A stretch of 64,000 nucleotides of DNA, from NCBI RefSeq assembly GCF_902459465.1, contig NC_047065.1, forward strand, positions 18,972,001 to 19,036,000. Reading direction: 5' to 3'. This DNA is from Asterias rubens (Eukaryota). The position numbers were made by a program, and so were the translations under genes. The notes below the pieces were generated by a model, which searched no databases, was not told the DNA's origin, and was given only the letters and a program-made list of their open reading frames with translations. How positions within the stretch are numbered: the first letter of the stretch is position 1; every line of letters starts with the position of its first letter. Below, piece after piece: positions 3,536 through 58,933 of this stretch.

Positions 3536-3686
3536 GTTTCAACTCCTAAGATAACATGTAATAGGATTGTAAATTTGTCAAAATCGGTTGATGAGGGAAC
3601 ATGAAAGGTAGAAAGAGTTGGTTTGAAAGTCATCGGCAGTGCTACAACGACCCCGTTATGGGTCGACCGGTAGGGACAAAACTTAC

Positions 3687-19481: not shown

Positions 19482-20384
19482 AGGCACCGGACACTATTTG
19501 GTAATTACTCAAAATAGTTGTCAGCATATAACGAGCAATGAAGAGATTCAATGTTCAATAATAAACGTTTATTCCATACTCTTGTTGAAAAAAAATACAA
19601 TTGTTGATAGTATACAAATATTGACTGCTTCGAGTGCTATGGTTAAAACTATGACTCCTGAGGTGATCCCCGGAGCGTTCTATTTTCCTGAGGCAAAGCC
19701 GAGGGGAAATAGAACGCTACGGGGATCACCGAGGAAGTCATAGTGTTAACCATTGCACGAGTAAAAAGCAGTCAATATTTGTTTTATAACTCCCCAAACA
19801 TTTCTCTAAAAGCTGTACTATTATTATTAAGTACAGACCTGAATGCTACAATCCACGGACGACGCGAATACAGATTGCAAAAACTTTTACTATACTTTGC
19901 TGCATGTAGTGTCGTGCAATCCAAAATGGTAACAGACTATTAATTTATCATCCTCGTACACGCAACGGACGTCTGGGTACTGCACGCCGTGTGCTAGTCT
20001 TCGGACTAGCGCACGGTAAACCGACGCACTATCACACGGCCGTCGTCTAGCAAAACTAAGACATGTCATGTGATGCGCTCTAAACCAATGAGCAGGCAGA
20101 ATACTTGTGAGGGGTGTTATAATATACATTATTGTGATAAACGACTGCCTCTGAAGTGACATGGTTTTCCGAGGAGTTAATTACTCACTCAAATAATAAA
20201 AACTTCAGCTGAAGCCTTCTATTCATGCATTTGGAAGCACAAAAGCTAATGCAACACGGGTGTTTTTTCTTTGATTATTTTCGTCAAAATTTTTGGACTA
20301 TATGACCCCAAATGCTCATGGGTTATGATTTATATTTGGGTACACCTAGTGATGACATTAACTAAATAATCCAGTGTCCAGTGC
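19482..20384. mobile_element. K1-like MITE in the gene B intron, interrupted by a nested insertion containing a hairpin
   Basis: ttaaaggcaccggacac start and gtgtccagtgcatttaa end. Non-K1 sequence at about 19560-20110. Confidence 0.6.
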
Positions 20385-20424
20385 ATTTAAACCGATCTTC
20401 CATTTCACTTATTTCACCATACAG

Positions 20425-23400
20425 AAATGATCATCACAACCAACTTGGTCGCCCAGACGGTCCACCACGACAGCAAACCAATCAGAGAGAACGCCCCTCG
20501 AGACCTCCAGGGTTTAAGAAGCTTGAATCTTTGCTGTCAGTCGATCCCGCAGTGGTAGTACAAGAGTTGAATTCATTTGGTAAAGGGTTCGAGAGTTTAC
20601 TGAACGAACGGGCGATACGTCGTGACATGATGGCTCTACTCATCGAGGTGCTGGGTAAAGTATGCGATTGTACTACCTCACCACAGTCTGTCATTAGGGT
20701 CCTGACTATTGTAGTTGACGTTGACTTTCTATCCCGAAACCTCACCAAATACATCTATAGCATGATGACTGAATATGACCCCAGGTTCTTAGCTAAAACA
20801 TCAGATCAGATCAACTTGATACTGAAGCTGATGAAATCTCTTGTGCAGCGAGTCAAGACTAGCATCAAAGACGTACAGGTTGTGCTGACCGTCATTGAGG
20901 CAGTTGCAAAGGGTCTAGGAATGAGAGGGTTCCCTTTGAGCGAAGATGCTGAAGTATTGCTAGTGGAGCTGCAGGCATTGTCAGCGCAGATTCAAGAAGA
21001 ACTTGCCCTGAAGAACACACGTCAAAGAAGAGGACAAGAAGGCCCACCGCCAAATGACTTCAGGGAGATCCCAATTTTCCCAAGTATTGAGGAAATCAAC
21101 ACCAATGCTGAGCCATACTTGAGACATAATGTGGTGAAAGGACGATACGAGGATCTTAACCATTACCTAGATGTTCAGTTCCGTCTGTTGCGACAGGACT
21201 TCCTGGAGCCTTTGAGGCTCGGGATCGCTCAGTATCTACTTCTTCAGGATGAGAATGGAAAGAAGAGCAAGGTGAAAGACATTCGAATTTACCATGACGT
21301 GAGGGTTCACTTTCCTATCTGCACCAACGAGGGGATAACTCACCGTGTTAGCTTCGATGTCACCAAGTTTGGGAAGATAAGGTGGCAGGCCACAAAGCGG
21401 CTAACCTACGGTGCATTGGTTTGCTTGTCCAATGATGACTTCAAGACGGTAATTGTCTTTGCAACAGTCGCCAACAGGAAACCAGAGCACCTGCAAGAGG
21501 GTTTGGTAGACTTAAGATTTCAAGACATGGGGCAGCTTGCAGATATTAAATCCTCAGATAAGTTCATCATGGCCGAGTCCTCTGCTTACTTTGAGGCTTA
21601 CCGTCATGTCTTGGAGGGTCTTCAAGAAGTAAGAGGCAACAGCCTACCACTGCAACGCTACATCATTGACGTCTCCAGCGATGTGAATCCCCCGCGGTAT
21701 CTTCACAGAAACAGAGCTGCAACCTATGACCTGTCACCATTGACAGCTGAAAGTCCGGAGGAAGAAGTTGTCTTGGGGCTTCGCAGTCTAAATTTGAGGA
21801 GGACAAATCCTCGAGCAAAGGCTGTGCAGGTTCTGAGTGAAGCAAGCTGGCCACGAGCAGATGTTTTGCAGTTCGATGAATCACAGATGGAAGCGGTTCG
21901 GGCAGCTCTCACGCAGGAAATAGCCGTCATTCAGGGGCCGCCTGGTACAGGTAAAACATACATCGGCCTGAAGATTGTGCGGGCTCTGTTGCACAACATG
22001 TCTGTGTGGAACGAGGAAGAAGATGAGAGTCCAATCCTAGTGGTTTGCTATACAAACCACGCCCTTGATCAATTTCTTGAAGGCATATTAGAGTTCAATC
22101 AAAACATCGTCCGGGTCGGAGGAAGGAGTAACAGCGAGGACATGAAGAACAAGAATCTGAACTTCTTAAAGAGAGAGGAGCGCCGGCGCAGGAAAGTCCA
22201 GGTAGCAATTCATCGTCGAACAACAGAGGTGCTAAGGGAAATGTACACTCTTCGCCAGCACATGGAGGCATCTCAACATAAAGTAGAGAAAAGTATGAAT
22301 GGGATAATCAGTGAATTGTACCTGGAACAGTTTATGACGAAAGATCACTACGCAACTCTCATGGTTGACTTGGGTTATCCACTTCAGTCGTCTCGTATAT
22401 TAGAATGGTTGGGTGTAGGTGGTGGTAACTTTCGTGTTGCAGGGAATGATCAAGGTCTAGCTGCTGCTGCTGCGATGTGGCAAACAGAACCAGATGAAGC
22501 GGAGCAACAAGAAGATGATGAGATAGAAGTAGATGAAGAGGCAGACATCTTAGCTGAGCAACGGATTCTTGATGATGACGATGATGACCTCTTCAACTTA
22601 GATCAGGACGCCCCGCAAGAAAATCACGTGGTCCTTGATTTAAATGATCTTGACAGGGAAGAAGGTAACGTCATCAATCCAGAACAGTGGCAGTACCAGA
22701 GCAAACAAAAGAAGAGGATGAAGAGAATGCTTCAACATAATCTTCGCAAACCTGACAGAATGACAAAAGAACAAGCTGAAAGAATTCATAATGTGTGGAC
22801 AGTGAGACTTATTGAAGACAGATGGCAGCTTTACCGCTACTGGGTGTCGGAGTACTGCAGCTCGGAGCGCAGAAGGATGGAAGTGATTCAAGGGAAATAT
22901 GAAAATCTCTCCCAGGAACTAAGGGAGGTTCGAGTAGAGGAGGACCTGGCAATTCTCCGTCGTGCTAATGTTATCGGTATGACAACAACAGGAGCTGCAA
23001 AGCACAGGAATGTTCTCCATCGTGTTGGCCCTAAGATTGTGGTTGTTGAGGAGGCAGCTGAAGTCTTGGAATCACATATTATAACGACACTGAGTGCGGA
23101 ATGTCAGCATCTTATACTCATAGGTGATCACCAGCAACTGAGACCCAACCCAACTGTCTACCGGCTGGCGAAAGACTTCAACCTTGACATTTCACTTTTT
23201 GAGAGGATGCTTAAAAATGGTGTCCCCTGTAAGACACTAGTTGAGCAGCACCGAATGCGCCCTGAGATCTCGTCAATAATGAAAAACCACTTCTACTCAA
23301 ATCTTCTTGACCATGGCGTTGTCAAAAATTATCCCAAGGTTGCAGGAGTCAGATCTGATGTGTTTTTCTTGGACCATGATATTGCCGAGCAGCATGTGGA

Positions 23401-25759
23401 TGACTCGATGAGCAAGTCGAACCTACACGAGGCTGACTTCTTGGCAGCTTTCTGCAAGTACATTATACAGCAGGGGCAGTACCAACCATCGCAGATCACT
23501 ATCCTAACTACGTATGTTGGTCAACTCTTTAACTTCAGAAAGCTCTTGAAACGTTCTGTGTTTAGTGGTGTGCGGGTCTGTGCAGTCGACAACTTCCAAG
23601 GAGAAGAAAATGACATCATCTTGTTATCTTTGGTCCGTAGCAATCAGGAAGGTCAAATTGGTTTTCTGAAGGTATCTAACCGAATGTGCGTGGCGTTGTC
23701 CAGAGCCAGACATGGCTTTTATTGTATAGGCAATTTTCAAGCTCTTGCTCATGGGAGTGCACTTTGGAGTGATATCGTTCATGAAGTAACAACTAAAGGA
23801 ATACTGGGGAAACACTTGGAATTGGTTTGTCATAATCACCCTGAGAAAATGTCCCGGGTACGCATGAAGGAAGACTTTTTGAACGTTGCTGAGGGAGGTT
23901 GCAACAAGCCCTGCGAGTACCGACTCAACTGTGGTCACAGTTGCACCATGTTATGCCATCCGACCGATCTCGACCACAAAGAATTCAAGTGTATGAAGTC
24001 CTGTAATAAGGTACTGATTTGTGGACATAAATGTGATCAGCTATGCTTCAATAACTGTGGCAAATGCAATACCAAAGTAAACAAGACGTTACCATGCGGG
24101 CATCAGAAGAAGATTCCGTGCTATCAGAATCCAGACTCGGCCACTTGCAAAGAACAATGCACCGAAAGACTTGCCTGTGGACACATATGCCAGAAGTTAT
24201 GCGGCCAAGAGTGTACTGTCCTCTGTGTTAAAACTACCTTTCGCAGCAACTGGCCTTGTAAACACATGGTGGGCGTAAAATGCAGCGATGGTCCGGAGGA
24301 CTGTCCAGAGCCATGCACAGCTGTGCTGAAATGTTCTCACGTGTGTACGGGCACTTGCGGCTCCTGCACACGAGGTCGGCTGCATAAGCAATGCTCTAAG
24401 AGTTGCGGTCGCACTTTAGTCTGCGGGCATGCATGTGATGCCCTGTGCACGAAAAACTGCCCTCCATGCAACAAGAAGTGTCATAATAGGTGTGTCCATA
24501 GTATATGCCCAAATCGCTGTGGCGAACCATGCAAGCCTTGTCAGGAGCCATGTGCCTGGCAATGTCGCCACCACGAGTGTCGCAAGAAATGCAGCGAGGT
24601 TTGTGACAGGCTACCATGCAACATTCCTTGTAATAAGAGGCTCAAGTGCGGTCACCCTTGTATTGGTCTTTGTGGGGAGCCATGTCCAAAGAAATGTCGT
24701 GAATGTGACAGAGAAGAGGTGACAACTGTTGTGTTTGGACCGGAAGACGAACCAGATGCTCGATTTGTTGAGCTTGAAGATTGTAAACACATCGTGGAAG
24801 TGGGAAGTCTTGACCATTGGATGAGTTTACAGACTGAGAAAGGTCAGATAAAGTTAAAGGTTTGTCCGCTTTGCAAAACTCCAATTCGGCGCAATCTGCG
24901 CTACGGTAGCATCGTAAACGCTGTACTCAATGACATAGAAACCGTCAAGGCTCGTATGTTTGGGGACAGAGTGGCCATTGCAACCAAACGACGGCAGGTA
25001 GCTCGCAGTGTTTTTCAACAGAGAAGCTCTATACCAAACGGGGTCGCCGATGACTTTAAAGAGCAGATGGAATCCCAGCTAAGCCTTGGGGAACTGACCT
25101 GCATTGAGAACAAGTTAAATATCCTGGTTGCCATAGAAAAGGCAAAGAAAAGAGCAGAGGATACAGATTGCAGGTTCGAAAAGGAGAAAAAGCAAATGAA
25201 ACAAGACCTCGTGCAATTGCAGTATTGGCTGCTGAAACCTCGCATGTATCTCAGCGATCAAGAGTTAGATGATTGCAGCAACGAAGAACATCGCCTCTCA
25301 CTGTGTCTTAGTCTGTTCCAAGTTAAAAGCAGGCTCCCACCTTCAGAGTTAAAGAGTGCAACCTTAAAGATTGCCGAAGATTTACTGTTGGGCGGAAGGG
25401 CTTTGGAGGAGAACAGCAGGAAGACTGTGCGAACTTTTTTGAACGAGTTGAAGAGAAAACATACTCCTCTGTGCATATCAGACGAAGAGCGAGTGATGAT
25501 CTTAAAAGCTATGGATCTTACGAAAGGCCACTGGTTCAAGTGTCCCAATGGTCACGTTTACGCGATTGGAGAATGTGGCGGGGCTACTGAGGAATCCACC
25601 TGTCCCGATTGCGGTGCAAACATTGGGGGTCTCGGCCATCGACTGGACTCGAGAAATGCACTGGCGTCTGAAATGGACGGGGCTACGCATCCATCGTTTG
25701 GAACAGTTGCTAACAACATGAACAATTTCGACCTGCTCAACGTTCCTGATGATATCTAG
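20425..25759 (+). CDS. ZNFX1: ZNFX1 gene B, large coding exon: helical N-domain, SF1 helicase, about 10 NF-X1-type fingers, RING-like finger, helical region, RZ finger
   Basis: Intact ORF with QGPPGTGKT, VVCYTNHALDQFLEG, VEEAAEV, LIGDHQQL, QHRMRPEIS, VDNFQGEENDIILLSLVRSN, NRMCVALSRAR, EDCKH...CPLC and GHWFKCPNGHVYAIGECGGATEESTCPDC. Acceptor catacAG at 20423-20424. Spliced product about 1843 aa. Confidence 0.96.
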
Positions 25760-39500: not shown

Positions 39501-39673
39501 ACTATGCGTTACTTCAGAGGGAGCCGTTTTTAACAACAACATTAATATTCTTTATCCCCGATGCAACGTCAGGTTAGTTTTACAGTGACAGATGAAACGG
39601 TGAAACTTAAATGGATTTTAGGTCTGCTTGAATTTAAAATTGATTTTTATATGATTTTTTTCTCTTCAGAATA

Positions 39674-40200
39674 ATGGAGGTTGATGCGGATGATCGAAGT
39701 GGTCACGAGAAACAGGCTGGTTCCAATAACCTCCATCGAGCTTCGCAAAGCCACGAAGTCAGACAGACGTCTTCCAGGGGGCGAGGGGCCGCACGAACGT
39801 CTGCCAGTGGGCGAGGGACTGCACGAACGTCTTCCAGGGGGGAGGGACTGCACGAAGAGCAAAATGGAAGATCACACGGTGCTTTTGGTGGTCGGTCTCA
39901 AATGAACTCTTCGACTCGACAGACACATGTAACCCCAACTGACACCTCAAGTAGAAGTACCAACATCGACAGGGGTGCAAGTGTTAGTCACCCTGGAGGT
40001 GCTCGACCCAAAGAGGGTAGACATTCTTGGAGGAGGGGAGAAAACCTGAAAAGTGGTTTTAAAAGCCACGAAAGATCCTCGAATCCGACAGGATGTACGG
40101 CTGATAGTGCAGGGCCGGAAAGTGAAAAATCGCAGCGAGGCAGATCTAAGGGGTCGCGGGACGGCGGCTTTAGGCGGACAGATAGAGCGAGCTACCAGGG
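39674..40200 (+). CDS. ZNFX1: Gene C first coding exon, copy 2
   Basis: Acceptor at 39668-39669, ATG at 39674, donor GG|GTAAGT at 40201. Phase 2; GG+T joins to 42315. Confidence 0.8.
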
Positions 40201-40462
40201 GTAAGTCACTCTAGGATTTCACTCGATGCTAAAGGCACTGGACACCTTTGGTAATTGTCTAGTCTTCTAACTTTGTGTGTATCTCAACATATACATAAAA
40301 CACCAAACCTGTTAAAATTTTGACTCAATATTGGTCGCCGAAGTTGCGAGAGAATAATGACAGAAAAAACATTCTTGTTATTGTGTGCTTTCAGATGCTT
40401 TGAAATCGGCTGAGGGCTCTTATCAAATTCGAACATTTTAGTGAGAAATTACTCCTTTTTAA

Positions 40463-42314: not shown

Positions 42315-45300
42315 TGATCCAAGCGGGGGTTATCAAAGATGGCGGAGAAATCAAAGTGACGCTCCTCAAACCTCAGGGCGGTACCAAGGTCAAGTTCAAG
42401 TTCAGCGCAGGTCGACTGTGCGTCCGATCCCAGAGGCAGAATTGCAGAAACTATTAAGAGAACAACCAATAAACATACTGTCTTGTCTAGTGAGTAAGAA
42501 GGGTGAATGGTCATCTTTATTAAACCAAAACATTTTCAGTGATGATCTAGTTATCCTTACACTGCGTGTGTTATACTGCATTTGTGATATAGACTCTGTT
42601 CAGGATGCCAGATTAAACTTAAATATAATATTTGATCTGCTAGCATCCTCTTGCTTTCTCAGCAAACATTTGTCGAGGTATTTAGTTTCTGTAACCGAGA
42701 AGATGCAACTGGGTGAAGATGGTAATGAAAGCATAGGTCTTAATGTTAACATGATGTTGAAAGTACTGAGTGTATACTTGCAGCATAAACCAAATGGTTA
42801 TGGAGAGATGGCAGTAGTATTGATTCTTCTTGATAAGTTGACGTCGTCACCAGCATTTGTTAGTCAGGCTTATTTGATGATTGAGGTGCAGAAACTAAAA
42901 GAAAGTTTTCATATCCTGGAAGAGTCTCAGCAAACCAAGCAAACAGTGAAGGTTAAACCACCACCAAACAACTTCAGAGATATTCCAATCTTCCCCGACA
43001 GCTCAGAAATTAGGACACCGACGCAGCCATTCCTACGAAAGAACATCATTCATGGAAGATATCAAGACGTGGAGCATTATCTTGATGTGCAGTTCAGGTT
43101 GCTGAGAGAGGACTTTGTGGCACCGCTACGGGAAGGTATCATAGAGTTTCTCTCTGTGACAAACAGTCGCCATCAAGATATTCGGGTGTACCGCAATGTC
43201 ACTATTCAAAGTAAGAAGATGGGGAGACGTAGTCTTCAGTACACCGTGAAGTTGGACGTCAACGGTCTCAAACAGATTAACTGGGGAAAGCGTTTCCTAT
43301 ATGGTTCATTTGTCTGCCTTACACAAGACAAGTTCCAGCACATCATCTGTGCGTCTGTGGCAGATAGGAACGAAAAGGACTTGAAAAAAGGTCTTGTTGA
43401 TGTTTGTTTTCTTACCGAGTGTAGTAGCACGCCTACAGGTACCTTTGTCATGGTTGAATCAGTTGCTTTCTTTGAACCCTATCGACACGTCTTACTAGGG
43501 CTACAACGAATGATCAGCGACGATTTCCCCTTTGAAAGGTACATCGTGAATGTTTTCTCTTTTGTTAGAACACCCAAGTATCTGAGTGGAGAGTGCTCTG
43601 ATGTGTATGACCTACGATCATTGGTTGTTGAAACTGATCAGGTCTTTGAAGATGAGGGTCTGACTGAAACCTTCGTAAATGCAACCTGTGTTTCGATTTT
43701 AGATCCACAAAGTTGGCCGACTGCAGAGGCCTTACATCTTGATGAGTCACAGAAGGCAGCTGTGCAGGCAGCATTGACGAAGGAGTTTGCCATCATCCAA
43801 GGTCCACCAGGAACGGGGAAGACTTACATTGGTCTCAAAATCATCGAATTACTTCTGTACAATTTACTTACGACAACAGATGCATCTCCGATTCTTGTGG
43901 TGTGCTACACGAACCATGCTCTCGACCAGTTTTTGGAGGGAGTTCTACGTTTTGGTGAGAGGAATCTGGTTCGTGTTGGACGCCAAAGCAAAAGTGAAGT
44001 GCTTAAATCTTTTAAGTTTTCGTCTCTCAAAAAACAGCTTGGAAGACATCACCCTATGAAGGACATACAGAAAGAAAAAGAACTCAGGGCAATCACATCG
44101 AGGCTACAATATACACTTTTAAGTGTAGCTTTTGCTAAAACTGTCGTATATAAAGCAGAGACACTACAACCATTCATGACTGATGACACACAAAGAACAC
44201 TTTTTGAAAAATTCAAGACTGAGAAGGATCCAACAGCAAACCTTCTGAACTGGCTGTTTGTAGTTGATATCGAAGGTGAAACAGATCGACCAGATTGTTT
44301 AGATTCAAATCAAGACCAGGATAAGTTTATAGACGTAGAAGATGAAAGCAATCGGATACAGCAAGAACGCCAAGCCGAGGACGAAGCCGGCTTCAGTTTT
44401 TTTGACGCGCAACGTAAGCAACAGGAACATTCCGTTTTAAGACGAAATGCAGCATACAGCAGTGAATGCGAAAAGCGATGTGGTAATTCAGGATATAATC
44501 TTCAGGAAGAACTTCAGAAGGATGACATGATGTCTGAAACAGAAGTTTCTAGAGTCACAAATGTGTGGAGTCTGACGTTAAGCGACCGTTGGCGGCTTTA
44601 CCGACTCTGGGTGAACAGGTACATTGAGGAGCAGGAGGAGTTGCTCTCGAAATATCGCAGGAGTTATGACAGCCTTTCAAAGGAAGTTGAAACTATAAAT
44701 GCAAGCGTCGATTTAGAAGTTCTCTCAAAAGCAAGGGTAATTGGAATGACGACAACAGGTGCGGCCAGATGTCAGTCGATGTTGCAGCTTCTTGGTCCCC
44801 GTATCGTGATAGTGGAAGAGGCTGCTGAAGTTCTTGAAGCTCATATCATCACCACCCTGACTGCAAAGTGTCAGCATCTCATTATGATTGGAGATCATCA
44901 GCAGTTGAAGCCAAACCCAACAGTCTATCGCCTGGCTAAGGTCTTCAAAATGGATACCTCTTTGTTTGAACGGATGATCAACAATGGCGTACCTTGTCAA
45001 ACACTAACCCATCAGCATCGTATGCGTCCTGAAATCTCAAAACTCATGAAGAAACATTTTTATAAGAATCTTCATGACGATGAGTCAGTGAAGGGTTTCG
45101 ATGACATCAAAGGAGTGGCACATAACATGTTTTTCATTGATCATACTAAGCTTGAAGATGGATCAGGCGATGACAACAAAACCAAATCCAACCATCATGA
45201 GGCTGAGGTCCTTGTCGAGTTGTGTAGGTACTTGTTGCATCAAGGATACCGGCCCAAACAGATTACCATTCTAACCACGTACTTGGGTCAACTCTCCACC

Positions 45301-47325
45301 TTCAAGAAACTTATGGATAAAGAGACCTTTGAGGGAGTTCGGGTGTCTGTGGTTGACAATTTCCAGGGAGAAGAAAATGACATCATACTTTTGTCTTTGG
45401 TTCGAAGCAACAAAGAGGGCTCCATTGGGTTCCTGAAGACTTCGAACCGTGTATGTGTGGCCTTGTCTAGAGCTCGCATGGGTTTCTATTGCATAGGTAA
45501 CGGCACCATCTTGAAGAAAACACAGATCTGGCAGGATATCATTGGCACTCTTGAAGCTGAGAATCAAGTTGGTTCGACACTGCAGCTTGTCTGTCAAAAT
45601 CACCCTGGCACAGTGGCTGAAGTTGCCTCAGCGGAAGACTTCAGATTCAAGGTTCCGCTGGGAGGTTGCGGGAGGCCGTGTGAGTTCACGCTTGCGTGTG
45701 GCCACCGTTGTGAATCATCCTGCCACCCGTACGACTGTGATCATACCACGTACAAGTGCAGAGTTCGATGCACACAGTTATGCAAAAGGGGCGAACATTC
45801 TCGTAACATTGAATGCTTTGAATCTGACAACCCCTGTAAAGAGATGGTGTTGAAGTTAACACCCAAGTGCGGTCATGAATCACAAGTAATGTGTGACGAT
45901 TTTGAGTCGGCCGATTGCACCGTTCCATGTACTAAGAAAATCACATGTGGACATTCATGTACAAACCTATGTTGGCAAGAGTGCACATTAGCATCATCAT
46001 GTACAGTAAAGGTTACGAGAACCTTAAGACAATGTCGTCATAAATTTGTCACGGAATGCTCCGGAAAAAAATATTTGGCAGAATGTCCTCATGAATGTGA
46101 CAAAATATTGAGCTGTGGACACAAATGTCCAAACAAATGCGGCAAGTCGTGTCCAAAAACAAAGCGGGATATAGTAGGCTGGCGTGTATCTGAGTACAAG
46201 AATTGCAATGATTTCTGCACAGAAAGGTGTGGAGATCAATTATCTTGTGGACATACATGTCCTAATAAATGTGGCGAACCATGTCCAAAAGCAGAAGTTG
46301 ATCCAAACTTTGGGGAATATCTTGAGCTTGAAGATTACCAGATTCCACTTATATGTACAGTCATGGTGAGCAAGAGGCTTCCTAGGTGTGGTCACACTGT
46401 TATTGAGGAGTGTTACCGGGATGTGAATTTGAGATCTTGCACAGTGATTTGTAACAAGGAGTTGCCGTGTGGTCATCGATGTAGTCTGACATGCAGCGAA
46501 CCATGTACATGCTTACTAAGTGTCAAGAAGACGCTACAACCTTGTGGCCATTCTTTCCAGATTCCCTGCAACAAGACGGACGATCTTAACAAATGTACCA
46601 AGAAATGTCCGAAGTTATTAACATGTGGGCATCGGTGTCCTAATAACTGTGGAGATCCATGCCCAGGAGGAGCTGACCATAACCCAAGCTCAGCTCAAAT
46701 TAACAATGTAGTAGCAATTGTTTGTCAGCGTTCGGTAATGAAGAAACTACCTGGATGTGGCCACAGTTTGGCCTTGCCTTGTTTCAAAGACGTCGAGTCA
46801 GTTGCATGCTTAGAAAAGTGCACTGAAATTCTACCATGTAAACACAATTGCCCCAACAGGTGCGGCGAGCCATGCCCAACAACTACCGATGAGGGTGACG
46901 ATTACAGTTTGTCTGACAACAGACAACCCTTTGCAATGAAATGCCAAGAAGGTGTCACCAAAAAGCTAGTTTGTGGCCACATCGTAAGAATGCCATGCTT
47001 TCAGAACAACAAATTGCTGTTATGCCCCAAACCCTGTGAGAACATTCTGTCATGTGGTCACCGATGCTCCAGAAAATGCGGCGAGGCGTGTCTTAGTGGA
47101 GGTCACCATGCAGAGTCGGAGAGCGAAAACGAAGGGGAGACACTCTGTTCTGGTGCGGATGCTGAGGTAGAACTGCCATCGTGGAAATGCCAAGAGTCTG
47201 TCTACAAAATGTTACCTAAATGTGGTCATTTTGTAAAACTGCCATGCTGCAAAAAAGCAACAACTGCGATATGTCCAGAAAGTTGCCAAAGGGTTTTTCC
47301 TTGTGGTCACAAGTGCCCCAAATAG
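42315..47325 (+). CDS. ZNFX1: ZNFX1-like gene C, large coding exon up to an in-frame TAG (helicase and about 17 zinc-finger units)
   Basis: Acceptor tttacAG at 42313-42314, in frame with ORF 42418-47325. All SF1 motifs present (QGPPGTGKT, VEEAAEV, IGDHQQL, VDNFQGEEND, VALSRAR). About 1845 aa when spliced to copy 2. Confidence 0.93.
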
Positions 47326-48372
47326 TGCGGAGAAGTGTGTCTGACTCCAGAAGAATGCAAAGCAGTGGTTAAGAAGAGCCTTCCGCTTTGTGGCCACGTT
47401 GTTGAAACTTGGTGTCAAAGGAACATCGACTTAATTAAGTGCACAGAAGACTGTGAAAAGGTGTTACCCTGTGGTCATGTATGTTCCAACACCTGCAGCA
47501 GGCCTTGCAAAGCTGAATGTTCAGAACCATGCAGCCATCGACTACGTCGATGTGGTCATAGATGTCCTGGTGAATGCGGTGTTTGCTTAGCATCTTCATA
47601 TCACGAGCTATGTGACAGTAAATGTGAGAAACCGCTCATCTGCGGCCACATCTGCAAAAGTGCATGCGGAAAATGTTCAGAGGACTGCGATGATTGTGAA
47701 CCTAGCTCTACGACGAAAGAGAGTCTCGATACGGGCTCATCATCAGCGGATGCCGAGGACTTTCAACAGTGCAGACATAACACTAAAAAGAGTCAACTTT
47801 TCCCACATGCCTGTACCTTACCTTGCAGTAAAAAATTGCAGACACGTGCGCACAACTGCAATCATTTTTGTATTGGTGTCTGCAACGAGCCATGCCCTCC
47901 ATTTTGTTTAACTTGCAACAAAAATAAAGTAGTTGCATCTTTACCCCAGCAAACTTGTCGTCGAGGTGACACGTTCATCTACCTCCCAGACTGCAACCAC
48001 CTCTGTGAGACACGGTTTCTCGACAAAATGATGGCAGGTTTCAGAAGTTCATCTGACTGCGTTCAGGTACGTTCTCCAACATGTCCCAAATGTGACCGGC
48101 CAATACGCAAGTGTCAGCGATATCAAGACTTACTTAAGGTTATCGATGAGTCAATTGACTCGGCGAGAAAACAAGACGCAAGAAGTAAACCGAGGAACAC
48201 CACTCGTGACGTCAGCAGATCCGCCATTGTTGTCGGAAGTTGGATGAGATGTCCAAAAAGTCACGTGTTCAATCACAAACGGACTACAAGCTCGCATGAC
48301 AACAGAGACAACAAAATTGTACTTTGTCAAATGTGTAGGCAACTTTTTTCTAACATCTCACCCAGTACTTAG
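47326..48372 (+). CDS. ZNFX1: In-frame continuation of gene C past the TAG: about 6 more fingers, RING-like finger, degenerate RZ-like finger
   Basis: Same frame as 42418, with no further stop for about 348 codons. LPDCNHLC...CPKC and GSWMRCPKSH...CQMC. Whether it is translated is unknown. Confidence 0.7.
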   Translation, partial: CGEVCLTPEECKAVVKKSLPLCGHVVETWCQRNIDLIKCTEDCEKVLPCGHVCSNTCSRPCKAECSEPCSHRLRRCGHRCPGECGVCLASSYHELCDSKCEKPLICGHICKSACGKCSEDCDDCEPSSTTKESLDTGSSSADAEDFQQCRHNTKKSQLFPHACTLPCSKKLQTRAHNCNHFCIGVCNEPCPPFCLTCNKNKVVASLPQQTCRRGDTFIYLPDCNHLCETRFLDKMMAGFRSSSDCVQVRSPTCPKCDRPIRKCQRYQDLLKVIDESIDSARKQDARSKPRNTTRDVSRSAIVVGSWMRCPKSHVFNHKRTTSSHDNRDNKIVLCQMCRQLFSNISPST

Positions 48373-49483
48373 ATTTTGCAACGTGACTGGTTCAGAGCGG
48401 GTCACACGAGGTCTTCCATACCCCTTCCACGTGACGTCACACACATAAAAAGCGCCCTCACTGGGATCAAAGGAGGCAAATGATTTGAAGATAGCTGTGC
48501 GTACAAAAATGTGCGCATTTTACAAGGGTCACATTGTTACTAGAAAGCAGCGCGAGCGTGACACACTCTACCATTAGCAACTAATGGACAGTACTAAACC
48601 CGCAGCAACCAATCATTTACTGCTTTTATACTCGTGCTCTTTTATAACAAATTGCAGCACTCGAAACAGCAAAAAAATACACGATTAACATAGATAGGGG
48701 TCAATAAATAAAACAAATTTTACAACAGAAGCGCAACTTGCGCCTATCCTGGCCGCTTTTTGGGGAATCCAAACATACAAATAGGACTCGACTCTAAAAA
48801 ATAATGTTCAATATTATGTTGGACGACAACAATATTGATCGTTGCTGAAATTCACAAAAATACTTTCAATCAATAAGGACAAGTTCAATTAAACAAATTT
48901 TGATTGTGTAGGAAAATCCCTGTTACGTCATCACTAATGTGACGCTTTGTTCAGCGAGGAGCTATAACAAAGAAAACCTCCACACACGACGTCAAAGTAC
49001 TAGTTAATTTGTCATTATGACGTACGCCGTCAACGGCAGTATAGTGTTCCTAGTTTTCAAAACGTTTAGGGTGGGCTTGATTTTTTAATCGATAGTTACT
49101 ACAGTTTCAAAAGTGTACAAATATCTTACTTATCTCAAATAATAAACAAACGTATTATAAACAAGTCTAAATAGCATGCCAGTTATTATTATTACTATTT
49201 TTTTTTTGCTCAGACAATTTAACGTTTCACTTGTATTCACACTTTCATCCGCAAGTTTCTGAAATGTACAGTGTATACAAAACAAAACTTTAGTCTCAAT
49301 CACCACCTTTTTGGATTTTGTGTACACAGGTCTAGTACACTTAGAATTTGATGGCCCTACTTCGTAGTGTTGTTTTAATATCTACAACACAAGGGATATA
49401 TTGTCAAGACAATAATTATTGACAACATTGAAGGCACCGGGAAATATAGTTTAAATTTTTTCAAACATAGAGTATTATGTTAA

Positions 49484-49862
49484 AGGCAGTTGACACTATT
49501 GGTAATTGTCAAAGATTAGCTTTCACAGTTGGTGCATCTCAACATATGTATAAAATAACAAACCTGTGAAAATTTGAGCTCAATCGGTCATCGAAGTTGC
49601 GAGATAATAATGAAAGGAAAAAACACCCCTGTCACACTAAGTTGTGTGCGTTCAGATGGTTGATTTCGAGACCCCAAGTTCTAAACCTGAGGTCTCGATA
49701 TCAAATTCGTGGAAAATTACTTCTTTCTCGAAAACTATGGCACTTCAGAGGGAGCCGTTTCTCACAATGTTTTATACCATCAACTTCTCCCCATTACTCG
49801 TCACCAAGAAAGGTTCTATGCCAATAATTATTTTGAGTAATTACCAATAGTGTCCACTGCCT
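49484..49862. mobile_element. K1 MITE, full length
   Basis: TTAA|AGGCAGTTGACACTATTGG ... CCAATAGTGTCCACTGCCT|TTAA. Confidence 0.85.
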
Positions 49863-51212: not shown

Positions 51213-51712
51213 NNNNNNNNNNNNNNNNNNNNNNNNNNNNNNNNNNNNNNNNNNNNNNNNNNNNNNNNNNNNNNNNNNNNNNNNNNNNNNNNNNNNNNNN
51301 NNNNNNNNNNNNNNNNNNNNNNNNNNNNNNNNNNNNNNNNNNNNNNNNNNNNNNNNNNNNNNNNNNNNNNNNNNNNNNNNNNNNNNNNNNNNNNNNNNNN
51401 NNNNNNNNNNNNNNNNNNNNNNNNNNNNNNNNNNNNNNNNNNNNNNNNNNNNNNNNNNNNNNNNNNNNNNNNNNNNNNNNNNNNNNNNNNNNNNNNNNNN
51501 NNNNNNNNNNNNNNNNNNNNNNNNNNNNNNNNNNNNNNNNNNNNNNNNNNNNNNNNNNNNNNNNNNNNNNNNNNNNNNNNNNNNNNNNNNNNNNNNNNNN
51601 NNNNNNNNNNNNNNNNNNNNNNNNNNNNNNNNNNNNNNNNNNNNNNNNNNNNNNNNNNNNNNNNNNNNNNNNNNNNNNNNNNNNNNNNNNNNNNNNNNNN
51701 NNNNNNNNNNNN
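51213..51712. other. Assembly gap (500 N)
   Basis: Run of exactly 500 N, a placeholder length. Confidence 1.
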
Positions 51713-53042: not shown

Positions 53043-54786
53043 TCATTCAAAGTATTCCATATCATCACTTGAAGATTCTGATTGACAGTCAGAAAAGCAA
53101 TCAGGGCAAAGTGCGCAATCTTCTAAATCATCTGATGCTTTGTCTTGACAGAACACATGACCTTCCGGACACCTCATCCACCCACCAACAGCAAAAGAAA
53201 GCTTAACAAATCGGTCTTCGTTACAGTTCTCTCTGGCTATATCCACTGACTCTCTGATTGTCTGAAGGACGTTTTCATAACGTGGACATGTACGGATTGG
53301 TGTCTGGCATTTAGGGCACAGAGCTGGTTGGATCTGCACACAGCCTGTTCCAGAGGTCTGGAAACCTGCAAACATTTCATCAAGAAACTGTGTTTCACAA
53401 AGATGTCTACAGTCTTTAAGGTAGATGAACGTTTCCTTTGGACGGATAGGTCCCGGAGGATATTTGTCAGCGATAAACTGTTTGTGACAGATACGACAAA
53501 CAGGTGGACAGGGTTCACCACAAACACCAAGACATAAATGATTGCAACGAAGTCTTTGGATGCATGGAAGGTTACAGGAAGTGGTATGTGTTTTGCGCTG
53601 ATGCTTACATTTGAGACTCTGCGTAGATATTTGAGGTAATCCCCTTGGCGACTTGTTGCAAAATTTGTGTGTTGGACAGACGTCATGTCCGCACAATTCC
53701 GAGCACCTATGTCCACAAAGAAGAATAGCGCCACAATTGTTATTGCAGAATGTATGTGTTCTACCAGGTCCTGCGCACGAACCACATGAACCGGGACATT
53801 TGTGACCACAACGAAGTACATGAATGCACGGTTCCTGGCAACTAGTGATAGCTGTACAATCAGATGCTTCCCAGCATGGCAATTTGATAACATGACCGCA
53901 TGGCGGAAGGGTCTTTTCCACACACTCGTCACACTGTTCTGACTCAAGACACGTCTCACCACATTCATTTGGGCATTTATGACCACACTTCATTATCTTC
54001 TCACATGGTTTTGAACATTCAGCGGACCCTGCTTTCTTGTGGCACGGAAGATTCATAAAATGGAAACACTCAGGTAGCTGCTTGTATACGGTGACTTGAC
54101 ATTTCTGTTTTACAAATTCGTTTTCATTCATTTCCTCTTCATCGTCACTGGATGTACATTCTTCGTTCGGGCACGGCTCCCCACATTTGTTCTCGCATTG
54201 ATGACCACATGAAAGAATCTTCTCACAGGGCTTCGGGCATACCAGTGATTCAACGCTTTTATAGCATGGACTTTCTATGACGTGACCGCAAAAAGGTATC
54301 TTTTTGTTCACAAACTGTTCTGACATAGAGGTCATCTTGTTCAGACGACCTGTTGCCATCATCATCCCAGTCACAGTAAGTTTCGTTCTTCTTTCGAGTG
54401 CTCTCTGTTGGGTCGTCTTCGCCATCCGCCGGGCAGGGTTCACAACATTTATTGGAACATGAATGGCCACATGGTAACATTTTCTGACATTTCTTCACAC
54501 ATTGATAGGAGTTGACATCTTGGTAGCAAGGGAGCCGAGCAGAATGTTCACAAGATGGCAGCTTTCTGTTAACTCTCAGTTTGCATTTGCAGGGGACGCC
54601 ACATTTATCTTTGCACCGGTGACCACATGATAACTCTTTGTTGCAGGTCTCTTTGCAAGTTAATGACGTAATATCAGCATGACATGGCACCGATTCAGTA
54701 TGATCACACCCAGGAAGCTTTTTATTTGTGATTTGGGTACACACCATAAACAGTATGCCGGCAACAATAATATAACAATAAACTTC
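53043..54786 (-). pseudogene. ZNFX1: Disrupted 3' part of gene D: zinc fingers, RING-like finger and RZ-like finger downstream of a TAA and across a frameshift
   Basis: ORF 54259-54747 is in the same frame as the main ORF. The finger pattern then continues in a different frame (ORF 53043-54470: NKKIPFCGH ... LKDCRHLC...CPKC ... GGWMRCPEGH...CPDC). Confidence 0.75.
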
Positions 54787-57700
54787 TTAGTGAAGCTGTA
54801 TGTATTCACCATAGGTTGGGTCCACTGTTTCCTTTGGGCACGGTTCGCCACATTTATTAGGACAGGGATTGCCGCAAGGTAATGACCGCTCACACTTCTC
54901 TTTGCAAAATGCTTCATAATGCCGCATAATCTTGGCGTCATCTAATCTTTCCCTTGTACAGGACATACCGCAGTACCGAGAGCAACGATGGCCACATTCC
55001 AACAACTTTTCACATAGATGACGCGGCGTGGAGTCGGGGTTCTTAGCACAATCCATCAGGACGTCATGGCCACACTTGGTAACGTGTTTAGAGACCTTGA
55101 CAGTACAGTAAGTAGTGCATTTAGCACCACACGCCCCTTTACATGCATGTCCACATGACAGTGTTCTAGGACATGGTTCTGTACAAGTGATTGACTCATA
55201 CCAACGACATTGAACCTGGATAACATGACCACACTCTGGCATCGATATAGAAACCTTGACAATACAAGTAGAACACGAATCTCCGCACGCCTTCCTACAT
55301 GGATGGCCACATGGCAATGATCTAGGACATGGTTCGGTACAAGTAACTGAATCAAACATTTCACATTCAACCTGAATAACATGACCACACTTTGGCATCA
55401 GTTTCTGTAGATTTCTCGAGCACGGTTCGCATTTCAAGTGGCATTTTAGAGGACACATGTGTTTCCTTCTACACATTTTTGAGCAGGGCTCTTTACATTC
55501 GTACTTTTCGTGGCATAAATCAAAGGGATGGCAGTGTAATTTGCATATGTGATTACATGGAAGCCTGTTTCCACATGGCTCGCCACAACCTCCGTCTTGA
55601 ACCTTCTCCTTGAAATCTCTGGCCGACGCTACCGCTGTTACTACTAAATGGTTTTGACAAACCAATGCAAGCGAGGAGCTAATTTTCTTCTCATCTTCAA
55701 GGGTTCTTAGTATGCTACTCCAGATAGAAGACTTTCTCAGGATGTTGGCGTTGCCAATACAGTAGAAACCCATGCGAGCTCTAGACAAGGCAACACAGAC
55801 ACGGTTTGAAGTCTTCAGGAACCCGATGGAGCCCTCTTCGTTGCTTCGAACCAAAGACAAAAGTATGATGTCATTTTCTTCTCCCTGGAAATTGTCAACC
55901 ACAGACACCCGAACTCCCTCAAAGGTCTCTTTATCCATGAGTTTCTTGAAGGTGAAGAGTTGACCCAAGTAGGTGGTTAGAATGGTAATCTGTTTGGGCC
56001 GGTATCCTTGATGTAACAAGTACCTACACAACTCGACAAGAACCTCCGCTTCATGCTGATTGGACTTGGTTTTGTTGTCATCACCCTCATCTTCAAACTG
56101 ATTGTGATCAATGAAAAACATGTTATGCGCCACCCCTTTGATGTCATCGAAACCCTTCACTGATTCATCGTCATAAAGATTGTTATAAAAATGTTTCTTC
56201 ATGAGTTTTGAGATTTCAGGACGCATACGATGCTGGTGGTTCAATGTTTGACAAGGCACGCCGTTGTTGACCATTCGTTCAAACAAAGAAGTATCCAAGT
56301 TGAAGCCCTTGGCCAGGCGATAGACTGTTGGGTTTGGTTTCAGATGCTGATGATCTCCAATCAGAATGAGATGCTGACATTTTGCAGTCAGAGCGGTGAT
56401 GATATGAGCTTCAAGAACTTCAGCGGCCTCTTCCACTATCACAATACGAGGACCAAGAAGCTTTAACATCGACTGACATCTGGCCGCACCTGTTGTAGTC
56501 ATTCCAATCACTCTTGCTTTTGAGAGAACTTCTAAATCGACGCTCGCCTTTATAGCTTCATATTCATTTGAAAGGCTGTCATAACTTATGCGGTAACCCG
56601 TCAGCATCTCCTCTTGCTCTTCAATGTACTTCTTAACCCAGAGTCTGTAAAGCCGCCAACGATCGCTTAACGTCAGACTCCATACATTTGTGACTCTAGA
56701 AGCTTCTCTATCGGACATCATGTCGTCCTTCTTAAGTTCTTCTTTTGGGGTGGTATCCAAATTCATACCACAGCGTTTCTCACACTCAATGCTGTATGCT
56801 GTAATTTCTTCTTCATCGTCAGAACTACTTGATTCATCTTCATCATCATCATCCTGTTTCTGTTTGCTGTCATCATCTACGCCAATGGACTTATCGTATA
56901 CTTCATAAGAATCTGTCGAGTCAACTACGTTCAGCCATTTCAGGAGGTTGGTTGTTGGTTCTCCTTGTCTCTTGATATTATTTTGAAAACCTGTTCGATT
57001 TTTGTCGCTCATGTAATAGATAAGCGTCTCGACTTTAAGTATGGCCGTTTTTGCACAAGCTACATCTGAAAGTGTAGATTGAATTTCCAATTTTGTTCGA
57101 TGCAGTTTTTTTTTAGCATTTTTTTCACGCTGTATTTGCTTCAACCTAAACTCCCTGGGAAGTTTCTTTTTTTCTTTGAGATTCTTTTCTCCCAATGCAT
57201 CACTTTTGCTTCGGCCTCCAACACGAACTAGGTTCTCCTCACCAAAATTTAAAACTCCCTCCAGAAACTGATCCAGCGCGTGGTTTGTATAGCACACCAC
57301 AAGAATTGGAGATGCATCTGGAGTTTTAGGTGTATTGAAGAGAAGTAATTCGATGATCTTGAGACCAATGTAAGTCTTCCCCGTTCCTGGTGGACCTTGG
57401 ATGATGGCAAACTCCTTCGTCAACGCTGCCTGCACAGCTGCCTTCTGTGACTCATCAAGATGTAAGGCCTCTGCAGTCGGCCAACTTTGTGGATCTAAAA
57501 TCGACACGAAGGCTGCATTTTCAAAGGTTTCAGTCAGACCCTCATCTTGAAAGACCTGATCAGTTTCAACAACCAATGGTCGTAGGTCATACACATCAGA
57601 GCAGTCTTCGCTCAGATACTTAGGTGTTCTAACATTAGATGAAACGTTCACAATATACCTTTCAAAAGGGAAGTTGTCACTATCCATCCGTTGTAGCCCT

Positions 57701-58933
57701 AGTAAGACGTGTCGATAGGGTTCAAAGAAAGAAACTGATTCAACCATGACAAAGGTACCGGTAGGCGCGTTACTAGACTCGGGAAGAAAACAAACATCAA
57801 CGAGACCTTTTTCCAAGTTCTCCGTATTCCTATCTGCCACAAACGCACATAACAAGCTCTTGAAGTTGTCTTTTGAAAGACAGACAAATGAACCGTATAT
57901 CAAACGGTTTTCCCAGTTGATCCGTCTGAGACTCTTGACATCTAACTTCAGGGTGTACTGAAGACTACGTCTCCCCATCTTCTTACTTTGAAAGGTGACA
58001 TTGCGGTACACCCGAATATCTTGATGGTGACTGTTTGCCACAGAGAGAAACTCTATGATACCTTCTCGTAGCGGTGCCACAAAGTCTTCTCTCAGCAACC
58101 TGAACTGCACATCAAGATAATGCTCGACATCTTGATATCTTCCCTTTATGATGTTCTTTCGTAAGAATGGCTTTGTTGGTTCCCAAATCTCTGAGCTGGT
58201 AGGGAATATTTTGATATCTCTGAAGTTAACTTGTGGCTTGTTCTCTATTTTTTGTTTTGTTTGACCTGACTCGGCGACAGAATGATAGCACTTCTTCAGT
58301 TTCTGTACCTGGATCATGTAATTCTGACCTTCGTGATCGATGTCAGTACAATCTACCAGGGAAACAGCCTTCTCGAGAAGAATCAGAACCACGCCCATTT
58401 CACCATAAATAATTGGCTTGTGTTCAAGGAATACTTTCAGCAATTTAAAAATCAATCTGATGTTGTTTGCAAGGGTTGCACCATGTCCACTGTCATGATC
58501 CCGTTGGTTTTGTGTGGACAAACCTACTAAGTATCTCGTCAAATGTCTACTGAGAAACCCTTCAGACTCTATCATACTGAATACCATATAAACATCTTGC
58601 TTTACTTTTGGATCTACACTTAAATCACAAATACACGACAAAACACGGAGTATTAACGTCATTATATTACTATTGAATGAGTCTAGATTTAAAAGTGCCA
58701 ACCATTCGTGTTTTCTGCTCAGAAGCTTGGAGAGAACTTCTTGTGGACTGGCCGTCAGCAGTGTCTTGAGTTCTTCCTCTGACATTGAGGGCGCCTTGGG
58801 AGTCTGCTTTACTTGAACTTGACCTGTGTATGTCCCTGAACCAGAACAAAAGTCGCTCTGTCCCCGACGCCATTTAGTTTCTTCTACAGGGGTTGGAGGA
58901 CTGTTCGGGCTCGAGGTTGTTGCACCACTGGAA
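54787..58933 (-). CDS. ZNFX1: ZNFX1-like gene D, large coding exon up to an in-frame TAA (helicase and about 9 zinc-finger units)
   Basis: Acceptor gtttcAG at 58934-58935, in frame with ORF 54787-58785. SF1 motifs present, with motif III reading GDHQHL. About 1551 aa spliced. Confidence 0.9.

What the first reader, a model, noticed from the sequence alone, without database searches (positions are those of the whole stretch)
45660..47890. Doubled zinc-finger array with periodic hypervariable inserts in C and D
Seen: about 23 C-x-H finger units in C and about 22 in D, against about 10 in B. A repeating module CGH.C...CGE.CP-[insert]-C...V.K.LP.CGH carries 15-35 aa inserts that differ at almost every position. 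C has KTKRDIVGWRVSEYKN, KAEVDPNFGEYLELEDYQIP, GGADHNPSSAQINNVV, TTTDEGDDYSLSDNRQP and SGGHHAESESENEGETL...; D has RERLDDAKIMRHYEA, ADGEDDPTESTRKKNETY... and NEECTSSDDEEEMNENE. B has no such inserts. Inference: a rigid zinc scaffold displaying variable, often acidic loops, possibly for ligand recognition or nucleic-acid mimicry. I know of no description of this in ZNFX1.
Basis: partly seen in the sequence, partly recalled or inferred. Interest (0 to 1): 0.72.

Follow-up and report, generated by a model that had tools for sequence, protein, structure and literature searches.

The report
Sea-star ZNFX1 paralogs: long looped zinc stalk
Two extra copies of the antiviral helicase gene ZNFX1 in the starfish Asterias rubens carry a zinc-finger stalk more than twice the usual length, with floppy, often acidic loops; the loops are an old sea-star trait that drifts fast, not a hypervariable recognition surface.

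Summary
Gene C (array at 45697-47907, +) has 25 C-x-H units in 737 aa and gene D (55557-53496, -) has 23. The canonical copy B has 10 in 256 aa. In five or six modules the last loop between zinc ligands is 16-38 aa, against 1-8 aa in B.

- **Age and spread.** The loops sit at matching positions in C, D and their paralogs, and in Asterias amurensis, Acanthaster and Patiria proteins. Of 120 homologs, 100 have no such loop. They are an old sea-star trait.
- **Rate of change.** Loops diverge about 1.3-2 times faster than the scaffold. dN/dS between intact copies is 0.72 in loops and 0.44 in scaffold (not significantly different).
- **Alleles.** Four other samples show almost no differences across C's array.
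- **Structure.** AlphaFold2 predicts a confident scaffold with low-confidence loops. One conserved loop is predicted as a hairpin.
- **Introns.** The loops are not unspliced introns.

C's in-frame TAG (47323) reads AAG in all four other samples, so C is probably intact and transcribed. D is a pseudogene here, with a nonsense codon, an 8-nt deletion and a lost zinc ligand.

The likeliest role is an elongated rigid stalk between the helicase and the E3 module, carrying disordered loops. The scan noted the same acidic-loop modules in the neighbouring cluster (s1-172681, s1-172791).

The parts
42316..48372 (+). Gene C, large last exon: ZNFX1 domain, SF1 helicase, zinc-finger array and short tail. 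[quoted passage not shown]
   Evidence: Pfam ZNFX1, AAA_11 and AAA_12 hits. 100% match to P0001. Exon mapping.
45697..47907 (+). C zinc-finger array: 737 aa, 13 canonical cores, 25 C-x-H units.
   Evidence: AlphaFold2 scaffold pLDDT 82-94. Foldseek best PDB match is 7zw0_sh, E 1.4e-5.
46156..46203 (+). C loop 1, basic (starts KTKRD), in a single-finger module.
   Evidence: pLDDT 51-54.
46288..46353 (+). C loop 2 (K-A-E-V-D-P..G-E-Y), conserved among sea-star paralogs.
   Evidence: pLDDT 83-85 with two short strands.
46666..46722 (+). C loop 3 (starts GGADHNPSS).
   Evidence: pLDDT 55-69.
46879..46941 (+). C loop 4 (starts TTTDEGDDYS), acidic.
   Evidence: pLDDT about 49.
47092..47187 (+). C loop 5 (starts LSGGHHAESESENEGE), acidic, 32 aa.
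   Evidence: pLDDT 43-44.
47323..47325 (+). In-frame TAG in the reference assembly. It reads AAG (Lys) in all four other samples, which fits the C-P-x-K-C-G-E consensus.
47698..47769 (+). C loop 6 (starts EPSSTTKESLD), in the penultimate module.
47908..48372 (+). C tail: a Miz/RING-like segment and a degenerate RZ-like motif (W-M-R-C-P-K-S-H-V-F). It lacks the roughly 200-aa spacer of B.
   Evidence: No PF20173 hit.
53496..55557 (-). D zinc-finger array: 12 canonical cores and 23 C-x-H units, collinear with C's array.
54907..54957 (-). D loop 1. It carries a 15-nt in-frame deletion relative to the A. amurensis ortholog.
54742..54837 (-). D loop 2, containing the nonsense codon TAA at 54787-54789 (AAA in A. 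amurensis) and a 3-nt insertion.
54319..54432 (-). D fused loop, made from two ancestral loops after loss of one module. An 8-nt deletion at its end removes the closing Lys-Cys and shifts the frame.
54102..54170 (-). D acidic loop (starts NEECTSSDDEEEMNENE), identical or nearly identical in D, E, G and the A. amurensis ortholog.
23930..24697 (+). B (canonical ZNFX1) array used for comparison: 256 aa, 10 C-x-H units, loops of 2-8 aa.
   Evidence: RZ finger PF20173 present.

Best explanation
The interval encodes the NFX1-type zinc-finger stalk of a sea-star-specific ZNFX1-like paralog. Gene D is a disabled sister copy.

Shown:
- The internal 52-aa two-finger module, present twice in canonical ZNFX1 (B), is present about eight times in C and D. 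This lengthens the array from 256 to about 740 aa.
- In every other finger of five or six modules, the last loop between zinc ligands has grown from 1-8 aa to 16-38 aa. This is the segment that already varies in length in the family consensus.
- The module amplification is ancient. There is no DNA-level repeat, and arrays with 13 cores also occur in coral homologs.
- The long loops were already present in the common ancestor of Asterias, Patiria and Acanthaster.
- Zinc ligands and scaffold are under purifying selection.
- Loops are weakly constrained (dN/dS about 0.7). They tolerate indels, and most are predicted to be disordered and rich in Asp, Glu, Ser and Thr. One loop is conserved and predicted to fold as a hairpin.

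Inferred, by analogy with human ZNFX1: there the fingers form a rigid stalk that links the RNA-sensing helicase to the Miz/RZ ubiquitin-ligase module and makes the lateral contacts of ZNFX1 filaments. The doubled stalk would therefore change the reach and geometry between helicase and ligase. The protruding flexible loops would modulate stalk-mediated contacts, such as self-assembly or partner, RNA or ubiquitin binding. They would not act as a diversified recognition surface.
For: - Family and architecture: Pfam ZNFX1 plus helicase domains; sequence match to human ZNFX1 chain 9q9z; Foldseek best match to the NFX1-type array in 7zw0_sh.
- Counts and module anatomy.
- Positional orthology of loops in C, D/AmD, E and P0002.
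- Taxonomic spread: three or more long loops occur only in sea-star proteins P0001-P0013 and P0016. Of 120 homologs, 100 have none.
- Rates: loop identity 24-34% against scaffold 48-59%. For Acanthaster against Patiria it is 46% against 66%, or 59% without Cys and His. dN/dS is 0.72 in loops, 0.44 in scaffold and 0.35 in the helicase between two intact genes.
- Indels: all three array indels between D and its A. amurensis ortholog lie in loops, and a whole-module deletion has its breakpoints in loops.
- Structure: scaffold pLDDT 82-94; loops 43-55, except loop 2 at 83-85.
- Not introns, and not allelically variable: no GT..AG borders; a single contig spans 45526-48485 with 2 differences and no gaps or joints.
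- C intact elsewhere: 47323 reads T>A in 4 of 4 runs.
- Role of the stalk in human ZNFX1: PMC13710534 and bioRxiv 10.1101/2025.10.14.682297.
Against: - No functional data exist for any sea-star ZNFX1-like protein. The role of the longer stalk and the loops rests on analogy with the human protein.
- D against its A. amurensis ortholog gives a loop dN/dS of about 4 (18 non-synonymous to 1 synonymous change). This could hint at adaptive change, but D is a pseudogene and the changes cluster around its nonsense codon.
- The kind of the runs laid (RNA or DNA) is not on record, so transcription of C is inferred, not shown.
- Low pLDDT is not proof of disorder.
- The alignment used for folding had only 43 rows.
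Confidence: 0.68

Rival explanations
1. The loops are a diversified, adaptively evolving display surface on a zinc scaffold. They would recognise ligands such as viral RNA or proteins, or mimic nucleic acid.
For: - Loops evolve faster than the scaffold.
- Loop dN/dS is about 4 for D against the A. amurensis ortholog.
- Several loops are acidic.
- Human ZNFX1 already uses an acidic helix to plug its RNA groove, so acidic mimicry has a precedent in the family.
- The genes sit in a birth-and-death cluster typical of immune genes.
Against: - There is no allelic variation in C's loops in four samples.
- dN/dS is 0.72 between intact copies and does not differ significantly from the scaffold (Fisher p = 0.11).
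- One acidic loop is identical or nearly identical in D, E, G and A. amurensis.
- D-lineage loops are not net acidic.
- The high dN/dS comes from a pseudogene and from 19 changes.
Confidence: 0.12
2. C and D are decaying pseudogenes, and the inserts are junk tolerated because the genes no longer function.
For: - D has a TAA, an 8-nt frameshifting deletion and a CGN in place of CGH at one finger.
- The reference copy of C has a TAG.
- One run shows a 4-nt deletion at 48128.
- Paralogs F and G also have broken frames.
Against: - C's TAG reads AAG in 4 of 4 other samples, and the frame stays open for 348 codons beyond it.
- The same loops occur in intact annotated genes: E (P0003), A. amurensis P0007, P0002, and Acanthaster and Patiria proteins.
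- All zinc ligands of C are intact, and scaffold dN/dS is 0.44.
- The loops predate the lesions by a long way.
Confidence: 0.12
3. The inserts are short unspliced introns, or an annotation or assembly artefact.
For: - The inserts recur at the same place in each module.
- Both of D's frame-disrupting lesions lie in inserts.
Against: - There are no GT..AG borders at any of the six C inserts.
- All inserts are in frame and free of stop codons.
- Contigs from four runs show no joints within the array.
- The inserts are kept in the gene models of four species.
- Loop 2 is conserved at the protein level and predicted to fold.
Confidence: 0.02

Closest known systems
Human ZNFX1 zinc-finger stalk (12 ZnF motifs between the helicase and the Miz/RZ E3 module; PDB 9q9z; PMC13710534; bioRxiv 10.1101/2025.10.14.682297)
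   Same: Same family and same position in the protein. The finger chemistry matches: C-x-H-x-C-x3-C cores alternate with C-x-H half fingers. The first 78 aa of C's array align to 9q9z. Window gene B is the canonical counterpart.
   Different: C and D have about 25 units instead of 10-12. Five or six of their loops are 16-38 aa instead of 1-8 aa. The helical spacer after the Miz-like part is missing, and the RZ finger is degenerate with no PF20173 hit.
NFX1 / yeast Fap1 NFX1-type finger arrays (7zw0 chain sh)
   Same: This is the best structural match to the AlphaFold2 model (E 1.4e-5, probability 0.99). It is a tandem array of the same finger type.
   Different: A different protein family, with no helicase and a PHD/RING plus R3H context (from my own knowledge, not tested here). 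The overall TM-score is low (0.18) because both are long and flexible. No long periodic loops were seen in that comparison.
Coral (Acropora, Montipora, Stylophora) ZNFX1-like proteins with 13 finger cores
   Same: The number of cores is likewise doubled, with module spacing of 51-56 aa. The doubled array is therefore not unique to C and D.
   Different: Their loops are 1-7 aa. They carry one single 225-340 aa insertion in mid-array instead of periodic 16-38 aa loops.
Sea-star paralogs and orthologs (A. rubens A, E, F, G; A. amurensis P0007; Acanthaster P0005; Patiria P0006 and P0011)
   Same: The arrays are collinear, with loops at the same positions and of similar composition.
   Different: Module numbers differ through in-register gains and losses. 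Loop sequences diverge, and several copies are broken.

Membership tests
[quoted passage not shown] | ZNFX1 domain (PF25396) followed by a UPF1-like SF1 helicase (AAA_11 and AAA_12) | tested here: met
   C: PF25396 at 1.2e-26, AAA_11 at 1.1e-32, AAA_12 at 2.7e-45. D: 2.2e-27, 4.3e-28 and 8.6e-45.
[quoted passage not shown] | Array of NFX1-type fingers directly after the helicase | tested here: met
   13 C-x-H-x-C-x3-C cores in C and 12 in D. Match to human ZNFX1 chain 9q9z at 4e-13. Foldseek match to 7zw0_sh.
[quoted passage not shown] | A match to the Pfam model for NFX1-type fingers (recalled as PF01422) | tested here: inconclusive
   No zinc-finger family was reported even at E up to 10, for C and also for canonical B. 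The scan does not detect the fingers even in a bona fide member.
[quoted passage not shown] | C-terminal RZ-type finger (PF20173) with the catalytic Cys in a G-E-C-G context | tested here: not met
   B has PF20173 at 2.1e-22. C and D have no hit. Only a W-x-R-C-P-x-(G/S)-H-V-F .. C-x-x-C remnant is present. C and D are therefore ZNFX1-like paralogs, not orthologs of ZNFX1.
[quoted passage not shown] | Helical spacer (coiled coil or bundle) between the Miz-like domain and the RZ finger | tested here: not met
   From the start of the last finger core, B runs 371 aa to its stop, C 172 aa and D 168 aa. The alignment shows no spacer in the sea-star subfamily.
Hypervariable display scaffold (diversified recognition loops) | Allelic or copy-to-copy hypervariability concentrated in the loops | tested here: not met
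   At most about 2 differences in 2.96 kb of C's array in each of four samples, and no loop indels. One acidic loop is identical or nearly identical in D, E, G and A. amurensis.
Hypervariable display scaffold (diversified recognition loops) | dN/dS above 1 in the loops | tested here: inconclusive
   0.72 between intact copies AmD and E. About 4 for the pseudogene D against AmD, from 18 non-synonymous and 1 synonymous change. No multi-species codon model was run.
Pseudogene | Frame-disrupting lesions relative to an intact ortholog | tested here: met
   This row is for D. It has TAA at 54787-54789, an 8-nt deletion near 54319 and a CGN in place of CGH, against intact A. amurensis P0007. For C the feature is not met: its TAG reads AAG in 4 of 4 other samples.

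The most novel reading that the evidence does not exclude
Sea stars evolved a separate class of ZNFX1-like sensor and ligase proteins. In these, a double-length rigid zinc stalk carries acidic, Ser/Thr-rich flexible loops with a working role. The loops might act as phospho-regulated RNA mimics that auto-inhibit the helicase, like the acidic blocking helix of human ZNFX1. Alternatively they might act as a paralog-specific code that governs which copies co-polymerise. Either way they would have been maintained since the common ancestor of living sea stars.
Probability: 0.12. Interest if true: 0.6.

Novelty: new variant of a known kind. Interest (0 to 1): 0.35.

Why it matters
In human ZNFX1 the zinc-finger stalk is needed for function, since patient mutations map to it, but its role is unknown. 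Sea stars offer a natural experiment. Within one 130-kb cluster there is a canonical copy beside copies whose stalk is more than twice as long, carries floppy loops and is joined to a pared-down ligase end.

Comparing these copies could show what stalk length and surface do for RNA sensing, polymerisation and ubiquitin transfer. The cluster also shows how an innate-immunity gene family turns over. Modules are gained and lost in register, lesions and indels concentrate in the loops, and disabling alleles are present.

It is not a new kind of variable receptor.

Tried and rejected
- **Unspliced introns.** Rejected: no GT..AG borders and no joints in contigs.
- **Pfam scan for NFX1-type fingers.** A scan at E up to 10 reported no zinc-finger family even for canonical B, so it is uninformative.
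- **Tandem Repeats Finder on both arrays.** No module-level DNA repeat was found, so the amplification is old.
- **C ortholog in A. amurensis.** None lies within 10 kb either side of the D ortholog. No close protein ortholog appeared among 120 hits. C could therefore not be put through an ortholog dN/dS test.
- **DNA for P0002.** It could not be fetched because the sample file was too large.
- **Blasi et al. 2022 survey of metazoan ZNFX1 (PubMed 35063603).** Not held in the library. I cannot exclude that it mentions variable finger numbers.
- **Literature searches.** Searches for ZNFX1 with starfish or echinoderm terms found nothing relevant.
- **RNA or DNA.** The kind of runs X4-X9 is not on record. 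The intron test leans towards RNA but is confounded by polymorphism.
- **First attempts.** The first genome search used an out-of-frame reference and failed. The first sequencing-run run found the tool busy.
Full report
**Where we are.** The window is chromosome piece C4:18972001-19036000 of the genome searched as G000. [quoted passage not shown]

The window holds four ZNFX1-like genes:
- A lies at the left edge, on the minus strand.
- B lies at 20381-25759 (+).
- C lies at 42316-48372 (+).
- D lies at 58785-53043 (-).

Three more copies (E, F, G) follow within 65 kb beyond the window. All carry the Pfam ZNFX1 domain and an SF1 helicase. Only B has the RZ finger PF20173.

**The observation.** Within the arrays I count these C-x-H units:
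- B has 10 in 256 aa (23930-24697).
- C has 25 in 737 aa (45697-47907).
- D has 23 (55557-53496).

Canonical C-x-H-x-C-x3-C cores number 7, 13 and 12. Splitting the proteins at each core shows a basic 52-aa two-finger module. B has two of them. C and D have about eight, of which five or six are stretched to 70-86 aa by an insert between the C-G-E-P-C(P) motif and the next Cys.

The insert occupies the last loop between zinc ligands. That loop is 2-8 aa in B and 1-7 aa in an Acropora homolog, but 16-38 aa in the sea-star proteins. As I recall the published NFX1-type consensus, this is the segment written X(1-10), the one already known to vary in length. That recollection was not tested here.

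**Are the inserts real coding sequence?** None of the six C inserts has GT..AG borders. All are in frame and free of stops. When contigs of four public runs were laid on 44000-49500, one contig spanned 45526-48485 with two differences, no gaps and no joints. The same inserts stand in gene models of A. amurensis, Acanthaster planci and Patiria miniata. The intron and artefact readings are rejected.

**Are C and D intact?**

C has one in-frame TAG at 47323-47325, and the NCBI model ends there. All four runs laid, from four studies, read A instead of T at 47323. That gives AAG (Lys), which restores the usual C-P-x-K-C-G-E motif. The stop is therefore private to the reference assembly, either a rare allele or an error. 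The frame is open for 348 further codons through the rest of the array and the tail. One run also shows a 4-nt deletion at 48128 at depth 6.6, possibly a disabling allele.

D was aligned to its intact A. amurensis ortholog (P0007; L015; 92.6% nucleotide identity). D has an AAA-to-TAA nonsense change at 54787-54789. It also has an 8-nt deletion near 54319 that removes the Lys-Cys closing a loop and shifts the frame. One finger reads C-G-N where the ortholog has C-G-H. D is a pseudogene in this assembly.

**Is C transcribed?** The runs' kind is not on record. Three points lean towards RNA:
- Their contigs total 116-171 million letters, against 551-560 million for runs marked as probable DNA.
- Contigs from a paralog-like conserved stretch (44736-45655) are 10-25 times deeper than C-specific contigs, more than the eight or so genomic copies could give.
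- Runs X4-X6 hold 0.96-0.97 of the array's words but only 0.39-0.52 of C's intron, and X7 and X9 do not appear among the intron's holders.

Intron polymorphism could explain part of that last point, so I rate transcription as probable, not shown.

**How old and how widespread are the loops?** A four-way alignment of the arrays of C, the A. amurensis D ortholog, E (P0003) and P0002 is collinear module by module, with loops at the same positions. Among the 120 best homologs, three or more long loops occur only in P0001-P0013 and P0016. Every named protein in that set is from a sea star. One hundred proteins have no long loop, and the few remaining proteins have one or two, among them one from a brittle star.

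Dozens of coral proteins also have 13 cores, but with 51-56 aa modules, short loops and one large 225-340 aa insertion. Neither array shows a DNA-level tandem repeat. So the doubled core count is an old, widespread variant of the family. The periodic long loops are a sea-star trait that predates the split of Asterias from Patiria and Acanthaster.

**Are the loops hypervariable or positively selected?**

Loops at matching positions are alignable:
- Old pairs show 24-34% identity in loops, against 48-59% in the scaffold.
- Close pairs show 64-76% in loops, against 82-90% in the scaffold.
- Acanthaster against Patiria shows 46% in loops against 66%, or 59% once Cys and His are left out.

One acidic loop (starting N-E-E-C-T-S-S-D-D-E-E-E) is identical or nearly identical in D, E, G and A. 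amurensis. Loop 2 keeps a K-x-E/T-V-D-P-x-x-G-E-Y motif across paralogs.

Nei-Gojobori estimates between two intact genes, A. amurensis D and A. rubens E:

| Partition | dN/dS |
|---|---|
| Helicase | 0.35 |
| Scaffold | 0.44 |
| Loops | 0.72 |
| Tail | 0.51 |

The loop-versus-scaffold contrast is not significant (Fisher p = 0.11). D against its ortholog gives about 4 in loops (18 non-synonymous to 1 synonymous change) and 0.46 in the scaffold. But D is a pseudogene, and most of those changes cluster around its nonsense codon.

Allelic variation in C's array is almost nil. Indels do favour the loops:
- All three array indels between D and its ortholog lie in loops.
- G's frameshift sits in the acidic loop.
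- The D lineage lost one whole module by a deletion whose ends lie in two neighbouring loops, fusing them.

The picture is weak constraint and indel tolerance, not diversifying selection.

**Structure.** AlphaFold2 was run on C residues 1233-1628 with 43 aligned homologs. Mean pLDDT was 78.

| Segment | pLDDT |
|---|---|
| Scaffold blocks | 82-94 |
| Loop 1 | 51-54 |
| Loop 2 | 83-85 |
| Loop 3 | 55-69 |
| Loop 4 | about 49 |
| Loop 5 | 43-44 |

Loop 2 is modelled with two short strands. The best PDB match by Foldseek is chain sh of 7zw0 (E 1.4e-5). I take that chain to be yeast Fap1, an NFX1 homolog, from my own knowledge. By sequence, the start of the array matches human ZNFX1 in 9q9z.

**How it most likely works.** Recent work on human ZNFX1 gives the frame for interpretation. 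[quoted passage not shown] It also reports that patient mutations of zinc ligands are deleterious and that the stalk makes contacts in ZNFX1 filaments (bioRxiv 10.1101/2025.10.14.682297). A second report finds ARM-to-ZnF contacts in tetramers and an acidic blocking helix that plugs the RNA groove (PMC13710534).

By analogy, C's array is a stalk more than twice as long. It is studded with flexible, often acidic or Ser/Thr-rich loops and joined to a shortened tail: the Miz-like segment is kept, the helical spacer is lost, and the RZ finger is degenerate.

I infer that this changes the reach between helicase and ligase and alters stalk-mediated contacts. Whether the loops bind anything, mimic RNA or are phosphorylated is untested.

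**Novelty.** The papers I could search describe six or twelve fingers and strong conservation of ZNFX1. None mentions sea-star paralogs or looped stalks.

I class this as a new variant of a known kind. The scan had already noted the same acidic-loop modules in the neighbouring cluster (s1-172681, s1-172791). I re-derived E, F and G only as far as their open frames.

Noticed in passing
window 47323: The reference T (codon TAG) reads A (AAG, Lys) in all four other runs laid. The NCBI protein model P0001 ends at this stop, so it is probably truncated by a private allele or an assembly error.
   Followed up: yes
window 48128: One run (X7) has a 4-nt deletion here at depth 6.6. This would shift the frame of C's tail and may be a segregating disabling allele.
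   Followed up: no
window 53043-58785 (-): In D against its A. amurensis ortholog, synonymous divergence is 0.165 in the helicase half but 0.052-0.057 in the array and tail. This threefold step suggests gene conversion or a mosaic history.
   Followed up: no
window 33647-34207 and 39671-40201: Two near-identical copies (88-96% at the protein level) of C's first coding exon. The NCBI model strings both into one N-terminus.
   Followed up: partly
window 48060-48372 and 53043-53200: The tails of C and D keep a W-M-R-C-P-x-(G/S)-H-V-F .. C-x-x-C remnant of the RZ finger. They lack the G-E-C-G context and the roughly 200-aa spacer of B. The Cys after H-V-F is present in D, E and P0002 but absent in C, Acanthaster and Patiria.
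   Followed up: partly
window 48447-48485: A short element just after C's stop codon has word depth of about 1000-6000 in all four runs and many loose ends. It is a highly repeated or highly expressed element.
   Followed up: no
L017 (G000:C4:19065500-19075499) and L018 (G000:C4:19090500-19100499): Paralog F has a 2647-codon open frame with still more modules, but it ends early inside the array. Paralog G is split by a frameshift inside the acidic D-D-E-E-E loop.
   Followed up: partly
window 51213-51712: A 500-base run of N lies between the 3' ends of C and D. I left it as it is.
   Followed up: no
window 44736-45655: Contigs 6-10% different from C, at 10-25 times C's depth, lie on the conserved end of the helicase. 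A paralog is far more abundant than C in these runs.
   Followed up: no
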